The notes under the pieces are model-generated. The model was given only the letters and a program-made list of their open reading frames with translations. It searched no databases and was not told the origin of the DNA. The position numbers were made by a program, and so were the translations under genes. From assembly GCF_001194135.2 (NCBI RefSeq), contig NC_068982.1:139795260-139859259 (forward strand): a DNA stretch of 64,000 nt. Reading direction: 5' to 3'. Positions 13,850 to 62,020 of this stretch are shown here, piece by piece; position 1 is the first letter of the stretch, and every line of letters begins with the position of its first letter. The DNA is from Octopus bimaculoides. Lineage: Eukaryota.

Positions 13850-14140
13850 AAGCCTAGCCACGCTCATGGGCTCGGTTTCCCAGTTTCTATGACGTATGTG
13901 TTCCCCTGCAGATGGACGAGATGCCAGTCCATCGCAACTTTACTCAAGTATCAGGAAGAAAGAGTGAGAGAAAGTTGGGGCGAAAGCGTACAACAGGTGT
14001 TCCAACCATCCTCTGCCGGAGGCCTCGTGGAGCTTTACAGGTTTTCGTTCAATAAACACACACAACGATTAGTCTGGGAATCGAAACCGCGATCCTTCGA
14101 CCGTTTTCCGCTGCCCTAACGTCTGGACCATTGCGCCTCC
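13850..14140 (-). mobile_element. tRNA-headed SINE family D with tail Y
   Basis: Reverse complement begins GGAGGCGCAATGGTCCAGACGTTAGGGCAGCGG...GGTTTCGATTCCCAGAC (A and B boxes). Tail GCGATGGACTGGCATCTCGTCC...GAAACCGAGCCCATGAG is shared with 59738. Confidence 0.85.
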
Positions 14141-27294: not shown

Positions 27295-27495
27295 AAACTG
27301 GCGCTCCGTCTGTTACGACGATGAGTTTCAATTGATCCGATCAACGAAAATCTTGCTCATGAAATTAACATCTGTGTGGCTAAGCATTATACAGACACGA
27401 ATAACTTTCAAGTAGTTCTCAAGGAGATTTAGCATGATGCACAATGTGATGGGGGAGGGGGTTCTTTGAATTATATATACCACTCATTTTCCCCA
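27295..27495 (-). mobile_element. SINE tail X fragment (headless)
   Basis: ctggcgctccgtctgttacgacgatgag...gatccgatcaacg...gaaattaac matches the tails at 45725 and 58409. Confidence 0.7.
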
Positions 27496-27499
27496 ATAT

Positions 27500-27915
27500 A
27501 GGCGCAGGAGTGGCTCTGTGGTAAGTAGCTTGCTTAGTAACCACATGGTTCCGGGTTCATTCGCACTGTGTGGCACCTTAGGCAAGTGTCTTCTACTATA
27601 ACCTTGGGCCGACTAAAGCCTTGTGAGTGGATTTGGTAGACGGAAACTGAAAGAAGCCCGTCATATATATGTATATATATATGTGCATGTGTGTGTATAT
27701 GTTAGTGTGTCTGTGTCTGTCTCCCAGGCGTCGCTTGACAACCGATGGTGGTGTGGTTGCGTCCCCGTAATTTAGCGGTTCGGCAAAATAGACTGGTAGA
27801 ATAAGTAATAGGCTTACAAAGAATAAGTGCTGTGGTCGATTTGCTCGACTAAAAGACGGTGCTCCAGCATGGCTGCAGTCAAATGACTGAAACAACTAAA
27901 AGACTAAAAGAGAGA
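27500..27915 (+). mobile_element. tRNA-headed SINE family A, full length
   Basis: GGCGCAGGAGTGGCTCTGTGGTAAGTAGCTTGC...GGTTCATTC head, CORE-like block, internal (TA/TG) tract, ...GCAGTCAAATGACTGAAAC and (TAAAAGA)n tail. Confidence 0.93.
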
Positions 27916-41222: not shown

Positions 41223-41359
41223 TATATATATATATATCTATATATATATATATACATATATTGATAACTTCTTCACTGTTCTCAGTCCTGTTAACGGCTG
41301 GGCGTTCGGGCGAGTATACTTGGAATTGATGTGCCAACATTTGAAATATTGTCTAGGTA

Positions 41360-41432
41360 AATGCAGCTGATGAAGACTGATCAGATTTACGTTGTGAAAC
41401 GTATTTGAAGAGTCTGAAACCGGTCCTGCATT
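41360..41432 (+). ncRNA. Type I hammerhead ribozyme motif with extended stem II, intact core
   Basis: AATGCAG-CTGATGA-AGACT-(32 nt, including TACGTT/AACGTA)-AGTCT-GAAA-CCGG-TC-CTGCATT: 7-bp stem I, palindromic ACCGGT, GUC site ending at 41425. Confidence 0.85.
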
Positions 41433-42332
41433 ATCCTCAATCTGGGTTGTCCATTTTCAAATGTTCTTCCTACAGGTATGACAAATTTTCCCGTTTGTTG
41501 CACACACGCATTTTTGCCAGTATATACGCAGTGAAGCTATACAATAGCGACGTATTTATATCGATTGCTATTTTCCAGTAAATATCGATGCCTTGTTGTA
41601 CCATTCTTCTGAACTTATATATACATATATATATTTATACATATAAATATTTTAATGGCGCCAAAAACAAAATGTGGCTAATTAAGATTTATAGCTTTCA
41701 CGTGTTTTTGCTTAAATAATTCCTACGTCTCTACAACATGTAATTTCTACAACAGAAAAAAATTAATTTAAAATAAATTCTTCATACACTTGTATCAATC
41801 TTCGTCTATATCTCCTTCTTTATTTATGCATCCAAACACATGCACACACACACGCAAACGCACACAAATGCAGAGTAACGCACATAGGCACACATTTATA
41901 ATACGTGACAAAGATTTTATACATGTGCGTGATTTATAAGGACCTTAAAAGTTTGCATTTAAATGAATTTATTCTTGAAATTACTTAACATATAGCCCCA
42001 TATGCACATGCAATTCATTTTCTAGTGTTAGGAATGATATTTTAAAGCATGATTAAAGTGAATATGTCAGTAATTTACCGATGGAAATATATATTCATTT
42101 CCATTTTATAAGTATTTTTTTGTATTAGATTTCTAATTAAAAAAATTGCACCACGATGCAAATTGATATAGATTATAAACATATAATCACCTAAGCGGAC
42201 AATTGGCACATCTCTCGTTAATTTGTGATTAATGACATAATTGGAATATTCTGTGTTACTTATTTACGACGAATACATTCGTTACATGTAACTTACCAAA
42301 ATTTCATGAAAAAAGCGTTAGTAGATACGTAC

Positions 42333-45724: not shown

Positions 45725-46050
45725 GAACTGGCACTCCGTCAGTTATGACTATGAAGATTCCAAATAATCCGATCAACGGAATAGCCTGCTCGTAAAATTA
45801 ACGTGCAAGTAGCTGAGCGCTCGACCGACACGCGTACCTTGAGCGTAGTTCTCATGGATATTCAGCGTGATACTGAATGTGACGAGACTGGAACTTTGAA
45901 ATACAGGTACGACTCATTTTTTCCAGCTGAGTGAACGGGAGCAATGTGAAATAAAGTGTCTTGCTCACTTACACAACGAACCTCTGGGAATCGAACTCAC
46001 ATCCTTATGATTGTGAGCCAAATATCTTAATCACTAAGCCACACGCCTTC
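45725..46050 (-). mobile_element. tRNA-headed SINE family C with tail X
   Basis: Minus head GGCGTGTGGCTTAGTGATTAAG...GAGTTCGATTCCC, body GAGCAAGACACTTTATTTCACATTGCTCC; flanks ttcaagat/ttcaggat may be a TSD. Confidence 0.88.
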
Positions 46051-50285: not shown

Positions 50286-51961
50286 ATGCAACAAAAACGC
50301 AATAGAGGACAATTAAACATTCAGACAGATAGACGATACAAGGGCGGACAGGAGAAACAACAATTAGTAAAACAGACAAAAAAAGCCGGATCATTTGTGG
50401 CCTTCTTTTTGGTAAGAAAGCTAGAGAGTGTGTACGGCAACAAAGACAAAAAACGGAGAAGATGGTACGCAATTAAAAATACAAACAAGAATATAACAAC
50501 AGGTGTCTTTCGGCTGAGAACAAATGAAATTGATGTGGCGGGTATAAAGTGACAGCCTAAAGGCAGGAATATAGGGGATGGACATAAGAGGTGTTGGCGG
50601 TCGATAGTCAGATCAAGAAAGAAAGATTATGGCTGGCCGGAATGCGGTCACGTGAAAGGAGGAGAGAGGCGTGGGGACAGCGGTATTGAAGGATTAAAAT
50701 GAAAAAAAACAGAGAAAAAGTAAAAGGCACAACGGAGATGAAAGAGGAGGAAAAGTGGGAGTGAAAGAAAGACAGGGCCAAGAAATATGTGAGAGGGAGA
50801 GAGAGAAATAGAAAAGAAGAAAGTATGAGGGGGACTAAAGTATATAGAGAACAGTCGTACAAAATTTATATATATATATACACAACCCGTAAAACCGGTT
50901 ACCGGGTTTCTTTGCCATATAAATGCTCGAGATATAATCAAAACGACAGTCCTTTGTACGTTCCATACCCAACGCTATTATTCATTCCCCATTAAGTAGA
51001 GATGAGAAAAAGCATATACAGTTTCATTAGTAGGGTTGAATGCATACGTTATATTTTCAGTTGTAGCACATTTTCAGAATATTTATTTTTAAAACTCCAT
51101 TGCAAAAAGTATGGAAAATGGCAGGAAGCCTTTTTATTGTTAGTTTGTAAAAATACGGAACTTTTCTTTACTACACTAGCAAATGAATATCTATAACTCA
51201 GTTGGGATTTCATCTGTAATTTTTATTAAAAAATAATCATTTATGAGCAAAGTCTGTGTTATTTTATTGCCCCAGGTAAAATGTATATAAATCGTATATA
51301 CATACAGAAACAGACGAAAGTATGACATGAAAGTCATTCGTGAGATTCATATATATATATATATATANNNNNNNNNNNNNNNNNNNNNNNNNNNNNNNNN
51401 NNNNNNNNNNNNNNNNNNNNNNNNNNNNNNNNNNNNNNNNNNNNNNNNNNNNNNNNNNNNNNNNNNNNNNNNNNNNNNNNNNNNNNNNNNNNNNNNNNNN
51501 NNNNNNNNNNNNNNNNNNNNNNNNNNNNNNNNNNNNNNNNNNNNNNNNNNNNNNNNNNNNNNNNNNNNNNNNNNNNNNNNNNNNNNNNNNNNNNNNNNNN
51601 NNNNNNNNNNNNNNNNNNNNNNNNNNNNNNNNNNNNNNNNNNNNNNNNNNNNNNNNNNNNNNNNNNNNNNNNNNNNNNNNNNNNNNNNNNNNNNNNNNNN
51701 NNNNNNNNNNNNNNNNNNNNNNNNNNNNNNNNNNNNNNNNNNNNNNNNNNNNNNNNNNNNNNNNNNNNNNNNNNNNNNNNNNNNNNNNNNNNNNNNNNNN
51801 NNNNNNNNNNNNNNNNNNNNNNNNNNNNNNNNNNNNNNNNNNNNNNNNNNNNNNNNNNNNNNNNNNNNNNNNNNNNNNNNNNNNNNNNNNNNNNNNNNNN
51901 NNNNNNNNNNNNNNNNNNNNNNNNNNNNNNNNNNNNNNNNNNNNNNNNNNNNNNNNNNNNN

Positions 51962-57415: not shown

Positions 57416-57945
57416 TTACTTTAAGTAATTTAAAAGATTTTGTTATTGATATCAGCTTACATTACAGGAAATATTTAAAGATTTGTGGATCTTTTTACAT
57501 GGAAGTTACACTTCAGAACGATTACTGTTGATAAAATGGTTACGAATGTTTTACTGAATTTTGAATAAGTGTTACATAAATTTTAATGAGCCCATGACTC
57601 CAAGAAAATATCAAATGTATATGCGCCGTAAACAGCCATTATTTCGAACATCTGCGTTTCAATTAGGCTTCGTTAAGATGGCATAGGTGATTTGGTAATA
57701 TTCATATATAAAATATATAGAACTGCGAACGAAGTAGCATATATTCATTCACTTGCTGGCTATTCTGGTGCGAAATTCTTTTTTAAAATCAGGTCAGTTA
57801 TGGGAGAGAATACATTTGCACTAATGGCCCTCACCTTTTTTATCTGATTTTCATTCTAATCACGTAAAAACATGCTTCCCAAAATATAATTTTTTATTTA
57901 TTATAGGAAAGTGACACAAACGCATAGAATCACACAAATACGTTA

Positions 57946-58196
57946 CTGGGCTGGTGCATAACTATTGTGTATTTTTTTTCAACAAATTTCATTTAACAAA
58001 AACAATAACAATATTTAACAAAAGCTTCCTTAAATGACGTTCGGACCGTCTGCCACGCAAATGGGAAGCGGTAATTGAAATAGATAGTGAATATACTCCG
58101 GAATAATAATTTAAATATGTTTTTGTTATATGTTGTTATTGTTTTTGTTGATTAAAATTTGTTGTAAAAAGCTGCAATAATTATGCACCAACCCAA
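57946..58196 (+). mobile_element. Mariner-derived MITE
   Basis: TA|CTGGGCTGGTGCATAACTATTG ... CAATAATTATGCACCAACCCAA|TA with roughly 80-bp inverted arms. The core encodes FGPSATQMG / DRLPRKWEAVIEIDSEY, matching the mariner C-terminus LP.RW..VI...G.Y. Confidence 0.88.
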
Positions 58197-58408
58197 TACT
58201 ATGGCCAATGTCTGCTGTCAGTAGTGATTAAATAAGTCTAATTAACTAGTAATTTAAGCTTTGGTGATTAGAGACCTGAATATCCTATTGTAGACTTTTT
58301 TTCTATTTATGGCTTTGGCGGTAGTGTCATTAATAATAAAAAAATGTGTTCGAAAAATATTTGGTTCAAAAAGTGTTTGGTGCCCCGATTTGTTGTCGAA
58401 TGGTCAGT

Positions 58409-58790
58409 CGTGACAATCCATCGGTTACGGCGACGAGAGTTCCAGTTGATCCGATCGACGGAACAGCCTGCTCGTGAAATTAACGTGCAAGTGGATGAGT
58501 ACGCTACAGACAAGTGTACGCTTAACGTAGTTCTCGGGGAGATTCAGTGTGACAGAGAGTATGACAAGGCTGGCCCCTTTGAAATATAGGTACAACAGAA
58601 ACAGGAAGGAGTGAGAGAAAGTTGTGGTGAATGAGTACAGCAGAGTTCGCCACCACCCCCTGCCGGAGCCACGTGGAGCTTTAGGTGTTTTCGCTCAATA
58701 AACACTCACAACGCCAGCTCTGGGAATCGAAATTGCCATCCTACGACCACGATTCCACTGCCGAAACCACTGGGCCATTGCGCTTCAAGT
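58409..58790 (-). mobile_element. tRNA-headed SINE family D with tail X
   Basis: Minus head GAAGCGCAATGGCCCAGTGGTTTCGGCAG...ATTTCGATTCCCAG; D body as at 13850; tail as at 45725. Confidence 0.9.
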
Positions 58791-58796
58791 GTGAGA

Positions 58797-58915
58797 CGCT
58801 TACAACATTTAGTTTTCGCAAACGGTCACCAATCTGAGTACTCACTAGGCTCGACATTGCTTAACTTCTGTGATCGGATGAAAACCGGTGCTTTCAAAAT
58901 GATATGGCCGTAAGC
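58797..58915 (-). pseudogene. Full-length 5S rRNA-derived sequence (pseudogene or SINE3-type head)
   Basis: GCTTACGGCCATATCATTTTGAAAGCACCGGTTTTCATCCGATCACAGAAGTTAAGCAATGTCGAGCCTAGTGAGTACTCAGATTGGTGACCGTTTGCGAAAACTAAAATGTTGTAAGC is colinear with metazoan 5S. Helix I ends pair; there are many C>T/G>A changes and no oligo-T terminator. Confidence 0.92.
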
Positions 58916-59574
58916 GAATGGTCAGTAAATGGACGTCAAAGTAGCAACTGAAGGCTGCGTCTGAGTTTCTGTGATTCTGTGACATGACCAAACGAAACAT
59001 GGATCAGTGGCAGCAAACTATTATCTTAGTTTACATAAAAATGAAATTCAACAAAAGAGAAATTAAATCATAAAATGTTCATGATAATACAACGGGGATC
59101 CAGCAAATGGGATTTTAAAACAGTAAAATAAGAGAATTGAAGTAATTCTGATAACATTCCAAGAATACAATTGTAAAATTGATATTAAATACGAAGGACA
59201 AAATGAAAAAATCTGGCGAAAAATAAGGTATTTGTTAATATTCGATAAACAACTACAGATACACACAAATACATACACACTCACACGCGCACATAGACAC
59301 ACACACACACACACACACACACGTACATACATACATACACACATACAAGTATGCTCGCGCACACATCTACAGCACATATATTATAAATGCGAGCCAATAT
59401 TTGTAAGTGTAGTTACGTCTGCATTTTTCACATCTATTTATTTCGTTCGTTTGATCTTCAATCAACAGAAGTCGCGCCTTCGCCAGAAGGAGGCGCTGCG
59501 ATACTAATCAGCACCATCGCCACCGCCTCAACCATCACATTCAGAATTACCTCAACCACCGCTACTCAACAACA

Positions 59575-59675
59575 CCAAGAACAACAACAGCAGCAACAAC
59601 AACAACAACAACTACTACTACTACTATTACTACTACTACTACTACTACTACTAGTGCTACTGCTGCTGCTGCTGT
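59575..59675. repeat. Compound (CAA)(CTA)(CTG) microsatellite
   Basis: Direct reading. Confidence 0.92.
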
Positions 59676-59737: not shown

Positions 59738-60045
59738 AAACGTGGAGGTACATGGCATAGTGTTTAAAGCAGCGGTCGAGGGTCGAAGGATCGCGGGTTC
59801 GAATCTCAGACCGGGCAATATGCGTGTTTATGAGAGAAAAACCTAAACTCCACTTGGCTCCGGTAGAAGGTAAGCGCGAACTTCTGCTGACACTTTCGCC
59901 GCAATTTCCTCTCACTCTTTCCTCCTGCATCTAACAGCTCACCTGCAACGGACCGGCGTCCTGTCCAGGAGGGAACCTATACGCCAATGAACGGGGAAAC
60001 GCGATCTTATGAGTCAGGCATGGCTCCAGAAGGAACAAACAACAA
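59738..60045 (+). mobile_element. tRNA-headed SINE family D with tail Y and (AAC)n end
   Basis: GGAGGTACATGGCATAGTGTTTAAAGCAGCGG...GGTTCGAATCTCAGACCGGG head; body and tail as at 13850. Confidence 0.85.
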
Positions 60046-60339
60046 CAACGTTTACAATAAACACGTTTACTGTTCCTCCTGCGACACTCGGCCATTCAAC
60101 TGCTTCTTAGGGTTACATTCCTCTGTTTTTTTCTCTTTTCGTTTTTTCACATTTGTGCTTGATATCATGGTTTTCACATCTCAGACACAATATCTCATCA
60201 TGTTATATTATTTTTGTGCCTACAAACGAATCAGATTTCAGTTCGAAGTAACCCCGACCCAGAACACTAACTGAAAAAAAAAAAGAAAAAAGAAAACTAA
60301 CTAATTCCACTCAGTTCGCTTCGAGTCTGATCAAATGGA

Positions 60340-60499: not shown

Positions 60500-60500
60500 A

Positions 60501-60548
<48 letters not shown>

Positions 60549-60630: not shown

Positions 60631-60914
60631 TCTATGTAATAATTTATATCAGATGCACCGCCACAGGAGAATATGCGTGAAAATGTAAACACGTAGACTG
60701 CAATACCTCGATACAAAAAGAAGGTATGAGAAAACCTTTAGTCATATATGCACTTATATCTCTTCAATTCTTCTATACATATGCACGCTGCTTTTCTTGT
60801 TTTCCCGCATATATATCAATAATAATTATAAATGTTATACAACCGACACACGGACTGCTTCTCACTTGAATTGATTCCACACTTATAGATAAATTGATGT
60901 TTGAATGCATTCAG

Positions 60915-62020
60915 TAGTGCAGACAACATCAGAAGATTAATTGGCTTTAGCATGAAGAAATGGAAAGTAGATCTCTATTCGTGTGACACAGCCTTAGGGA
61001 AAGTTAATGTCAACAGAGGAATTCCTCAAAGGAGTCTTTGTTGCTATTTAATATGTCTTATGCTTAATCTCTCTCAATTAAGGAAGGCAAAGGCAGCGTA
61101 TCAGTTCAGAAAGAGGGAAAAAATTGACCATTTGCGCTACATGGATGATCTGAAGCAGTTTAATAAGAATGAGAAAGAGACAGATTCTTTCCTTCAGACT
61201 GAAGGACTCTTCAGTAAAGATATAAGCATGGAATTTGGCATAGATAAGCATGGAATGTTAGTCACGAGAAGGGGGTCAAGTAGTCAAAAGTGAAGGCATC
61301 CAATTGCCAGATGTCCAGACATTAAAATCATTGAAAGAAGGAAAGAGTTATAAGTATCTAGAAGAATCAGAATCTCTCAGAGTATGAAACTTAGAAATGA
61401 AAACGAAAATTGAGAAGGTGTACATCAGAAAGCTGAGGGGATTAATGAAGGCAAAACTAAATGGTCTGAATCTAATGAAAGCATGAGAAGTATCTTGGGC
61501 AGTATTTGTGGGAGCACACTCGGGCAGTAGCCTTACTTATATACTCAGCAGCGTTTCTAGATTGGAAAGTCACAGTTAGCAAAGCTAGACACTAGGACTA
61601 GAAAGGAATTCAATAAATATGTAATACTCCACCAAGGAGCAGGATGCACAAGATTATATTTACCTAGAAAAGACGGTGGGAGAGAGTTAATATCAATATA
61701 AAACTGCGTGAAGTTAGCCACGATAGATACAGTCACCTATATATGTAATACGGGAGAAAGTTTATTAAAAGCTGCTAAATTCACAGCAAACCAAAAAGCC
61801 GAATGAAGTTAAAAAGGAAGATTATCTGACTGGCAAGAGAAGGCTTTGCATAGTGGATTCCCAAAGATAGTTGCTGGAAATAACAGTAGTGATACATGGT
61901 TTGGTTGCAGAAAGGAAGGTGGAAAATAGAGACAGAATGTTTGTTTGTAGTAGCATAGGATGAAGTATTGAGTACTAATGCGATACATGTCAAGATAGAA
62001 AAGAAAAAAAAGGTAAATTC
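60915..62020 (+). mobile_element. R4/Dong-like LINE reverse transcriptase region (decayed)
   Basis: SMKKWKVDLYS..LGKVNVNRGIPQ...YQFRKREKIDHLRYMDDLKQFNKNEKETDSFLQT..FSKDISMEFGIDK, then SYKYL, MKAKLNG, RLYLPRKDGGRELI and DWQEKALH; YMDD is retained but there are frameshifts. Confidence 0.9.

What the first reader, a model, noticed from the sequence alone, without database searches (positions are those of the whole stretch)
58398..58926. 5S rRNA fused to a full-length tRNA-headed SINE inside a single target-site duplication
Seen: on the minus strand a complete ~119-nt 5S rRNA copy (58915-58797) runs, with about 10 nt of linker and no oligo-T terminator, into the head of a family D SINE that continues to its normal 3' end (58409). 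The 507-bp unit is flanked by an exact direct repeat GAATGGTCAGT (58398-58408 and 58916-58926; 12 bp counting the shared C). The other two D copies here have no 5S upstream. Known: 5S-headed SINEs (SINE3), 5S+tRNA composite heads (AmnSINE1-type) and snRNA/LINE template-switch chimeras exist in other animals. Inference: the 5S and SINE integrated in one event. It is either a one-off template-switch chimera or a member of a cephalopod 5S-tRNA double-promoter SINE family that I do not know to be described.
Basis: partly seen in the sequence, partly recalled or inferred. Interest (0 to 1): 0.85.

Follow-up and report, generated by a model that had tools for sequence, protein, structure and literature searches.

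The report
5S rRNA–SINE chimeric retrocopy in octopus
A decayed but full-length copy of 5S ribosomal RNA sits directly in front of a complete short mobile element (SINE) inside one pair of insertion scars, so both were pasted into this octopus-like genome in one event; this is a neat example of a known process, and it does not show a new mobile-element family.

Summary
Rfam finds one full-length 5S rRNA at 58915-58797 (-), 80.5 bits. After 8-10 nt and no T-run comes a SINE with a perfect box A and a box-B-like motif, ending at 58409. The 507-bp unit is flanked by the exact repeat GAATGGTCAGT, which occurs only twice in the window.

The SINE is modular. Its 5' 190 nt match two other copies in the window that carry a different tail. 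Its 3' 186 nt match two copies with different heads. The same head+body+tail mosaic appears translated at the N-terminus of Octopus bimaculoides protein A0A0L8HIS0, there without 5S upstream, so 'family D' is real.

Both halves are about equally decayed: 5S 12.6% and SINE 11.3% at conserved sites. The 5S has 6 of 34 pairs broken, two new internal T4 runs and a mutated box C, so the copy is dead.

Best reading: one LINE-mediated integration in which reverse transcriptase copied the SINE RNA and then switched to a 5S rRNA.

Whether the junction recurs in the genome (a 5S+tRNA SINE family) could not be tested, because no tool reached octopus genomic DNA. None of 6 other SINE heads has 5S upstream, and no protein-library hit spans both parts. 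I lean towards a one-off. Interest is moderate to low.

The parts
58916..58926 (-). Target-site duplication, copy at the 5' side of the element (minus strand reads ACTGACCATTC). It directly abuts the first base of the 5S.
   Evidence: Exact 11-mer, only two occurrences in the window; position read; chance estimate.
58797..58915 (-). Full-length 5S rRNA retro-copy, now a pseudogene. It has 6 of 34 model pairs broken and two internal T4 runs (58899-58896, 58884-58881). Box C carries private changes at alignment positions 81, 94 and 95, and position 98 just past the box also differs.
   Evidence: Rfam RF00001, 80.5 bits, model 1-120; comparison with intact 5S genes; T4 scan.
58787..58796 (-). Linker TCTCACACTT between the 5S 3' end and the SINE head. 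It has no oligo-T terminator. It is 8 nt (58796-58789) if the SINE starts at TTGAAGCGC. Its origin is unknown.
   Evidence: Sequence; SINE 5' end defined by the TSD of copy c14k.
58597..58786 (-). SINE head and body ('A' module): box A TGGCCCAGTGG 58777-58767, box-B-like TTCGATTC 58731-58724, then a body ending CAACTTTCTCTCACTCCTTCC.
   Evidence: 72-79% identity to window copies 14139-13958 (-) and 59742-59923 (+) and to Logan contigs L002-L006; motif scan.
58409..58596 (-). SINE 3' module ('B' tail), presumably LINE-derived. It ends ...GGATTGTCACG and has no poly(A).
   Evidence: 68-75% identity to the 3' parts of 45913-45729 (-) and 27432-27305 (-), which have different heads. The same A/B mosaic is translated in O. 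bimaculoides A0A0L8HIS0 residues 11-110.
58398..58408 (-). Target-site duplication, copy at the 3' side of the element.

Best explanation
This is a bipartite chimeric retrocopy made in a single retrotransposition event.

Inferred steps: the reverse transcriptase of the partner LINE started target-primed reverse transcription on the 3' tail of a 'family D' SINE RNA and copied it to its 5' end. It then switched template to the 3' end of a 5S rRNA molecule and copied that to its first nucleotide. 8-10 extra nucleotides remain at the switch point. The joined cDNA was then sealed into the staggered break.

Shown by the sequence: the result is TSD - full 5S - linker - full SINE - TSD.

The copy has since decayed by roughly 11-13% in both halves. 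It is non-functional as a 5S gene and as a 5S-driven element, because it has broken helices, a mutated box C and two internal T4 terminators. Most likely it is a one-off 'frozen intermediate' of the process thought to create 5S-headed SINE families, not itself a family member.
For: - One exact 11-12-nt TSD encloses both parts, and nothing comparable sits at the internal junction.
- The 5S covers Rfam model positions 1-120. Its first base abuts the TSD, so it has RNA ends, not a piece of a 5S rDNA array with spacer.
- Intact invertebrate 5S genes have their T-run 0-1 nt after the 3' end, whereas this copy has none. It is therefore not a gene copy with its terminator.
- 5S and SINE lie in the same orientation, with the small RNA 5' and full length. 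This matches U6/L1-type chimeras (bioRxiv 10.1101/2025.02.02.635956).
- The two halves are similarly old. 11 of 87 sites (12.6%) invariant in four intact 5S genes differ in the 5S. 16 of 142 sites (11.3%) where at least 3 of 4 other copies agree differ in the SINE.
- The SINE alone is a real family. The same head+body+tail mosaic occurs in O. bimaculoides A0A0L8HIS0 without 5S upstream. The 5 other head copies also lack 5S.
- No ORF spanning SINE and 5S was found among 1.84 billion representative proteins, although SINE-only and 5S-only ORFs were found.
- Template switching from a SINE RNA to 5S rRNA is the mechanism published for AmnSINE1-type and HaSE3 heads (PMC4824008; PMC3272025).
Against: - The decisive datum, the copy number of the junction in the genome, was not obtained.
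- The linker TCTCACAC(TT) is unexplained. Template switching predicts a direct join or a few untemplated bases, so 8-10 nt fits genomic spacer in a co-transcribed source locus just as well.
- Both TSD copies are perfect although the interior is about 11-13% diverged. The expected chance of that is about 0.05-0.10. Part of the divergence may therefore pre-date insertion, for example in a diverged master copy.
- The octopus 5S sequence itself was not available, so 5S decay was measured against other invertebrates' genes.
- The partner LINE was not identified.
Confidence: 0.6

Rival explanations
1. The unit is one copy of an amplified composite SINE family with a 5S head placed in front of a complete tRNA-type SINE (two Pol III promoters). 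Masters would be transcribed from the 5S promoter and mobilised through the shared 3' tail. That would make it a cephalopod analogue of SINE3 or AmnSINE1 at an early, untrimmed stage.
For: - Such families exist and are thought to start in exactly this way (PMC4824008; PMC3272025; PMC5786205).
- The lack of a terminator between 5S and SINE would allow read-through.
- The two T4 runs inside the 5S sit at positions that differ from intact 5S genes, so they could post-date insertion.
- Perfect TSDs beside an 11-13% diverged interior would be easier to explain if the master was already diverged.
- The genome itself was never searched.
Against: - None of 6 other copies of this SINE head has 5S upstream. 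This is a weak test: the 95% upper bound is about 39% of copies.
- No SINE+5S ORF appeared among the 108 hits of the protein-library search.
- The junction pattern was absent from every DNA collection scanned, though none of those holds octopus DNA.
- Both parts are full length with a spacer, whereas known 5S-headed families have trimmed 5S and/or tRNA parts.
- 5S type-1 promoters depend on upstream context, so retroposed copies are usually silent (discussed in PMC3272025).
- No cephalopod SINE3 was found in the literature searches.
Confidence: 0.2
2. The unit is a retrocopy of a read-through transcript from a single source locus. There, a family-D SINE had inserted a few bases downstream of a 5S gene or pseudogene and removed its terminator. 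Pol III started in the 5S, ran through the SINE, and the SINE tail recruited the LINE machinery. The linker would then be genomic spacer. Two or a few copies would share the junction, with no sustained amplification.
For: - An 8-10-nt linker that is neither 5S nor SINE, with no T4 run.
- Insertion into the T-rich terminator region of a Pol III gene is plausible for a LINE endonuclease (general knowledge, not tested here).
Against: - Intact 5S genes sampled from other invertebrates have the T-run 0-1 nt after the 3' end. A SINE landing 8-10 nt downstream would normally leave the terminator intact.
- No such source locus was seen, though none could be looked for.
Confidence: 0.1
3. Two independent events or a DNA-level rearrangement brought a 5S pseudogene next to an older SINE, and the flanking repeat is coincidental. 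Alternatively, the join is an assembly artefact at a repeat.
For: The region is repeat-rich and the assembly has 13 N gaps.
Against: - The exact 11-12-nt repeat abuts both independently defined ends. The background for identical 11-mers at this spacing is about 1.6e-4 per position, mostly from microsatellites.
- There is no TSD or tail around the 5S alone.
- The nearest N gap ends at 51961, more than 6 kb away.
- The two halves are equally decayed.
Confidence: 0.05

Closest known systems
Bipartite chimeric retrogenes of mammals (U6/L1, U6/Alu, 5S/L1 and others; Buzdin et al. 2003; catalogue in bioRxiv 10.1101/2025.02.02.635956)
   Same: A small Pol III RNA is fused 5' of a retroelement inside one TSD. 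In the U6 type the small RNA is full length and in sense orientation. The junction is attributed to RT template switching or prior RNA ligation.
   Different: - Here the 3' partner is a complete, non-truncated SINE with a LINE-like tail and no poly(A), not a 5'-truncated L1.
- Human 5S/L1 chimeras are mostly antisense and truncated at 5S position 46 or 90, whereas here the 5S is sense and complete.
- The host is an octopus and the LINE partner is unknown.
- An 8-10-nt linker is present.
AmnSINE1 / 5S-headed DeuSINEs (Nishihara et al. 2006)
   Same: The order of parts is the same: 5S-derived sequence upstream of a tRNA-derived SINE head. [quoted passage not shown]
   Different: [quoted passage not shown]
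- Here both parts are complete, only one copy is known, and the body is not shown to be a Deu domain.
HaSE3 of Helicoverpa armigera (Wang et al. 2012, PMC3272025)
   Same: It is an invertebrate chimera of 5S rRNA with the body and tail of a co-resident tRNA-derived SINE (HaSE1), proposed to arise by template switching.
   Different: In HaSE3 the 5S replaces the tRNA head and central domain, and the element occurs in several copies and species. Here the 5S is added in front of an intact head, and recurrence is not shown.
SINE3 (zebrafish; Kapitonov & Jurka 2003)
   Same: A 5S-derived 5' part followed by a LINE-related tail.
   Different: SINE3 is a high-copy family with a conserved box A/IE/C promoter. 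This copy has private changes in box C, two internal T4 runs and a second (tRNA-type) promoter region, and no evidence of amplification.
Modular ('jigsaw') mollusc SINEs and octopus OR1/OR2/OK SINEs (PMC4758252; Ohshima & Okada 1994)
   Same: The SINE part is built from exchangeable modules. The head+body is shared with one set of copies. The tail is shared with CORE-like and other SINEs.
   Different: No 5S-containing module has been reported for mollusc SINEs in the papers read.

Membership tests
Chimeric retrocopy (small RNA + retroelement, one integration event) | Two unrelated RNA-derived parts joined head-to-tail in the same orientation | tested here: met
   5S followed in the same sense by the SINE.
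Chimeric retrocopy (small RNA + retroelement, one integration event) | One target-site duplication encloses the whole unit, with none at the internal junction | tested here: met
   Exact 11-12-nt repeat at both outer ends, unique in the window. No repeat flanks the 5S alone.
Chimeric retrocopy (small RNA + retroelement, one integration event) | The 5' part has the ends of the mature or primary RNA, not of a genomic fragment | tested here: met
   Model 1-120 is matched, the first base abuts the TSD, and there is no rDNA spacer and no terminator.
Chimeric retrocopy (small RNA + retroelement, one integration event) | The junction is unique in the genome | not testable with these tools
   No collection with octopus DNA could be scanned. 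Pattern scans of metagenome, prokaryote-genome and viral contigs gave 0 hits. The O. bimaculoides locus that was reached returned no DNA.
5S-headed SINE family (SINE3 / AmnSINE1-type composite) | Many copies with the same 5S-body junction and different TSDs | tested here: inconclusive
   None of 6 other head copies has 5S upstream, and no SINE+5S ORF is in the protein library. The genome itself was not searched.
5S-headed SINE family (SINE3 / AmnSINE1-type composite) | 5S-derived head retaining the box A / IE / box C promoter | tested here: inconclusive
   The box A region is largely intact. Box C has private changes at alignment positions 81, 94 and 95, with 98 just past it. These may post-date insertion.
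5S-headed SINE family (SINE3 / AmnSINE1-type composite) | Transcribable through to the tail (no internal Pol III terminator) | tested here: not met
   Two T4 runs lie inside the 5S of this copy (58899-58896, 58884-58881). This says nothing about a possible master copy.
tRNA-derived SINE (SINE2), 'family D' | Internal box A and box B at tRNA-like spacing | tested here: met
   TGGCCCAGTGG matches TRGCNNAGTGG 11 of 11. TTCGATTC lies 46 nt downstream.
tRNA-derived SINE (SINE2), 'family D' | Head recognisable as a tRNA (cloverleaf or covariance model) | tested here: not met
   ARAGORN finds 0 genes, also at relaxed thresholds and on the consensus. Rfam gives no tRNA hit at E<=10 or E<=5.
tRNA-derived SINE (SINE2), 'family D' | Independent copies with the same head+body+tail architecture | tested here: met
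   O. bimaculoides A0A0L8HIS0 residues 11-110 translate a copy with the same head, body and tail order and the same module junction. This was seen at protein level only.
Functional 5S rRNA gene | Intact helices, a T-run terminator, and usually a tandem array | tested here: not met
   6 of 34 pairs are broken, against 0 in L007. There is no T-run. It is the single 5S copy in 64 kb.

The most novel reading that the evidence does not exclude
The unit is a member, or the first sampled copy, of an undescribed cephalopod SINE family. In that family a complete 5S rRNA head sits upstream of a complete tRNA-type SINE, giving two Pol III promoters. It would be an early, untrimmed stage of the 5S-takeover seen in AmnSINE1-type elements, caught in a mollusc.
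Probability: 0.2. Interest if true: 0.55.

Novelty: new member of a known kind. Interest (0 to 1): 0.35.

Why it matters
If it is a one-off, it is a clean invertebrate example of RT template switching from a SINE RNA to 5S rRNA. Both parts are complete, which is the hypothetical first step in the published model for how 5S-headed SINEs (AmnSINE1, HaSE3, SINE3) arise. It also shows that the octopus SINE/LINE machinery makes such chimeras. That makes it a useful illustration, but it does not change the understanding of the process.

If the junction proves to be amplified, it would be the first 5S-containing SINE family in cephalopods as far as my literature searches went. It would also be a rare case that retains both promoter types. 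That would let one ask which promoter drives transcription and how the redundant head is later lost.

Tried and rejected
1. Protein-word search with the 92-aa open frame that runs antisense through SINE, linker and 5S (58635-58910 +): no candidates.
2. Exhaustive HMMER search of the same frame against 1.84 billion representatives: 108 hits. About 100 are antisense ORFs of ordinary 5S genes. Two are SINE-only ORFs (P0129, P0134). Hits whose alignment seemed to span both parts (P0133, P0131, P0137, P0127 and others) turned out on inspection to be 5S arrays or unrelated flanks.
3. Six-frame, multi-copy concatenated SINE query: only 2 hits. One of them (A0A0L8HIS0) proved useful.
4. Sampling octopus DNA through a decayed LINE RT in the window (60898-62000): the hits were at most 52% identical, and the one locus fetched (L001) has no shared SINEs, so it comes from another animal.
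5. Look-ups of P0229 and P0230: not on record. P0231 (O. bimaculoides DNAH12): the gene spans 253 kb, so no DNA was returned.
6. Ten window ORFs are not in the protein collection.
7. Junction and SINE-head patterns scanned in metagenome, prokaryote-genome and viral contigs: 0 hits each.
8. Search for a paralogous empty site in the window or fetched loci: the flanks are unique.
9. Obtaining a cephalopod 5S sequence: the old NAR paper (PMC326244) is not held. The 5S genes reached (L007, L008, L009) come from unidentified marine or other metazoans and share no SINE with the window.
10. I considered that the SINE itself might be a second template-switch product, which would make the unit a tripartite chimera. 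I rejected this because the same head/tail mosaic occurs independently in O. bimaculoides.
11. I considered that the linker is a pre-5S 3' trailer. This is unsupported: sampled intact genes terminate 0-1 nt after the 5S.
12. Tail hairpin covariation from 3 copies: too few sequences to conclude anything.

Full report
**What is there.** On the minus strand the sequence reads as follows:
- ACTGACCATTC (58926-58916)
- a 119-nt 5S rRNA (58915-58797)
- TCTCACACTT
- GAAGCGCAATGGCCCAGTGG..., a SINE running to ...GGATTGTCACG (58409)
- ACTGACCATTC again (58408-58398)

Rfam's 5S model matches 58915-58797 end to end (positions 1-120, 80.5 bits against a gathering score of 38). This is the only 5S hit in the window, even at E<=5. 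The 11-mer repeat, 12 nt with the adjoining base, occurs only at these two places on either strand. Identical 11-mers at this spacing are found at 9 of 56,292 window positions, nearly all in microsatellites. Here the repeat also abuts two independently defined ends.

**Anatomy of the SINE.** BLAST and MAFFT against the rest of the window show that the SINE is modular.
- Its 5' ~190 nt (58786-58597) match 14139-13958 (-) and 59742-59923 (+) at 75-79%. Those copies continue into a different 3' part that ends in an A-rich or (CAA)n tail.
- Its 3' ~186 nt (58596-58411) match 45913-45729 (-) and 27432-27305 (-) at 68-75%. Those copies carry other heads: one a CORE-like element, one a different SINE that I recognise from memory as abundant in octopus.

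The mosaic is nevertheless a real family. The N-terminus of UniProt A0A0L8HIS0 (Octopus bimaculoides, a dynein model) is a translated SINE with the same head, body and tail and the same module junction. Residues 11-110 are 55% identical to the translation of 58699-58421. The ten residues upstream of its head (MTAGYNGRGG) are not 5S. This also places the window in an octopus or a close relative, by inference.

The TSD of copy 14139-13958 (CAAAACTT) fixes the head's 5' end at GTGGAGGCGCAATGG. In the unit the SINE therefore begins at about 58788, and the true linker is about 8 nt (TCTCACAC).

Box A (TGGCCCAGTGG, 58777-58767) is a perfect match to TRGCNNAGTGG. A box-B-like TTCGATTC lies 46 nt downstream. 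Neither ARAGORN nor Rfam recognises a tRNA, even when relaxed or on a five-copy consensus. The head is therefore 'tRNA-type promoter-bearing' rather than demonstrably tRNA-derived.

**State of the 5S.**
- An intact 5S gene recovered from a public contig (L007) scores 109 bits with 0 broken pairs. The unit has 6 of 34 pairs broken.
- Among 87 sites invariant in four intact invertebrate 5S genes (L007, L008 and two in L009), the unit differs at 11 (12.6%; 8 are transitions). Positions 81, 94 and 95 lie in box C, and position 98 lies just past it.
- There are two internal T4 runs (58899-58896, 58884-58881), at positions where the intact genes have other bases.
- Those intact genes carry their T-run terminator 0-1 nt after the 3' end. 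The unit has none.

It is thus a retro-copy of the RNA, not a gene, and it is dead now.

**Age of the two halves.** The SINE head and body differ at 16 of 142 sites (11.3%) where at least 3 of 4 other copies agree. This is close to the 12.6% of the 5S. The agreement fits a single insertion of an essentially canonical 5S together with the SINE. At that divergence, the chance that both TSD copies stay perfect is only about 0.05-0.10. This is a mild tension. It may mean that part of the divergence pre-dates insertion.

**Mechanism.** Three features point to an RNA-mediated, single-event origin:
- one TSD around both parts;
- RNA-defined ends of the 5S;
- same-sense order with the small RNA at the 5' side.

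This is the signature of bipartite chimeric retrogenes attributed to LINE RT template switching, or to prior RNA ligation. It is also the event proposed as the origin of 5S+tRNA composite heads (AmnSINE1-type) and of HaSE3. What the sequence shows is the architecture. The template switch itself, the identity of the LINE and the origin of the linker are inferred or unknown.

The linker could have three origins:
- extra 5' nucleotides of the SINE transcript;
- untemplated or patchwork synthesis at the switch;
- genomic spacer, if the RNA was a read-through transcript from a 5S locus with a SINE just downstream.

**One-off or family?** This is the question that carries the interest, and I could not answer it directly.
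- The junction pattern and a SINE-head pattern gave no hits in metagenome, prokaryote-genome or viral contigs. None of these collections holds octopus DNA.
- The 92-aa open frame across the junction gave nothing in the word-indexed search.
- Read against 1.84 billion representative proteins, the same frame gave about 100 ordinary 5S-gene ORFs and two SINE-only ORFs, and none joining both.
- The two SINE-only ORFs led to short Logan contigs (L002-L006). Their SINE copies have the alternative tail and no 5S.
- The O. bimaculoides chromosome assembly is in the look-up collection, but the only gene I could reach spans 253 kb and no DNA was returned.

In total, none of 6 other heads has a 5S upstream. 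That excludes only a family making up more than about 40% of head copies. Literature searches found no cephalopod 5S-headed SINE. Together with the untrimmed look of the fusion (both parts complete, with a spacer), I put a one-off chimera at about 0.6, an amplified family at about 0.2, and a read-through retrocopy at about 0.1. The remainder goes to independent events or artefact.

**Verdict.** The single-event inference is well supported. The 'novel double-promoter SINE family' reading remains possible but has no positive support. As it stands, this is a new example, in a new host group, of a known kind of retrotransposition by-product. It is of moderate to low interest, and one genome-wide BLAST of the junction would settle the matter.

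Noticed in passing
window 13958-14139 (-), 59742-60050 (+), 45729-46047 (-), 27305-27650 (-): At least three SINE head types share modules. Two copies have the same head and body as the unit but an A-rich/(CAA)n tail (the first is flanked by the TSD CAAAACTT). A CORE-like element (relaxed ARAGORN calls its head tRNA-Leu-like) and a different SINE that I recognise from memory as abundant in octopus both carry the unit's 3' tail. This is a 'jigsaw' organisation like that described for other molluscs.
   Followed up: partly
window 60898-62000 (+): Decayed non-LTR retrotransposon reverse-transcriptase remnant (YMDDL motif; weak Pfam RVT_1 hit; many stops and a frame shift). The closest proteins in the public collection are only 36-52% identical. 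Its 3' end does not match the SINE tail.
   Followed up: partly
window 57944-58035 and 58109-58198: Inverted repeat of about 92 nt at 80% identity, with arms about 75 nt apart, 200-450 nt from the unit. It may be a MITE-like element or a hairpin. It is not otherwise repeated in the window.
   Followed up: no
protein P0229 (UniProt A0A0L8HIS0, Octopus bimaculoides), residues 1-110: The first ~110 residues of this older dynein gene model are a translated SINE, which is probably an annotation artefact. The RefSeq model of the same cluster, XP_052827483.1 (DNAH12, 3752 aa), is longer. P0230 (MetaClust, chitin-synthase-like) likewise contains a translated piece of the SINE tail at residues 1072-1122.
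   Followed up: partly
L009 1-3200 (ENA ERZ27293352 k119_1131098) and L007 (ENA ERZ27295149 k141_593607): One 3.2-kb contig from an unidentified metazoan carries 7SL RNA, U1, U4, U5, U2, a tRNA and two 5S genes side by side. Another contig links 5S to U5. These are dense clusters of small-RNA genes, unrelated to the window's SINEs.
   Followed up: no
window 41352-41446 (+): Sub-threshold Rfam hit to Hammerhead_HH9 (26 bits against a gathering score of 52, E=0.035), next to an N gap. It may be chance. The many mir-297 and mir-3149 hits elsewhere are microsatellite artefacts.
   Followed up: no
window 59261-59347, 59567-59661, 60500-60548: (AC)n, (CAA)n/(ACT)n and (TATC)n microsatellites lie close to the unit. 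The window as a whole is 35% G+C and has 13 N gaps (3808 N).
   Followed up: no
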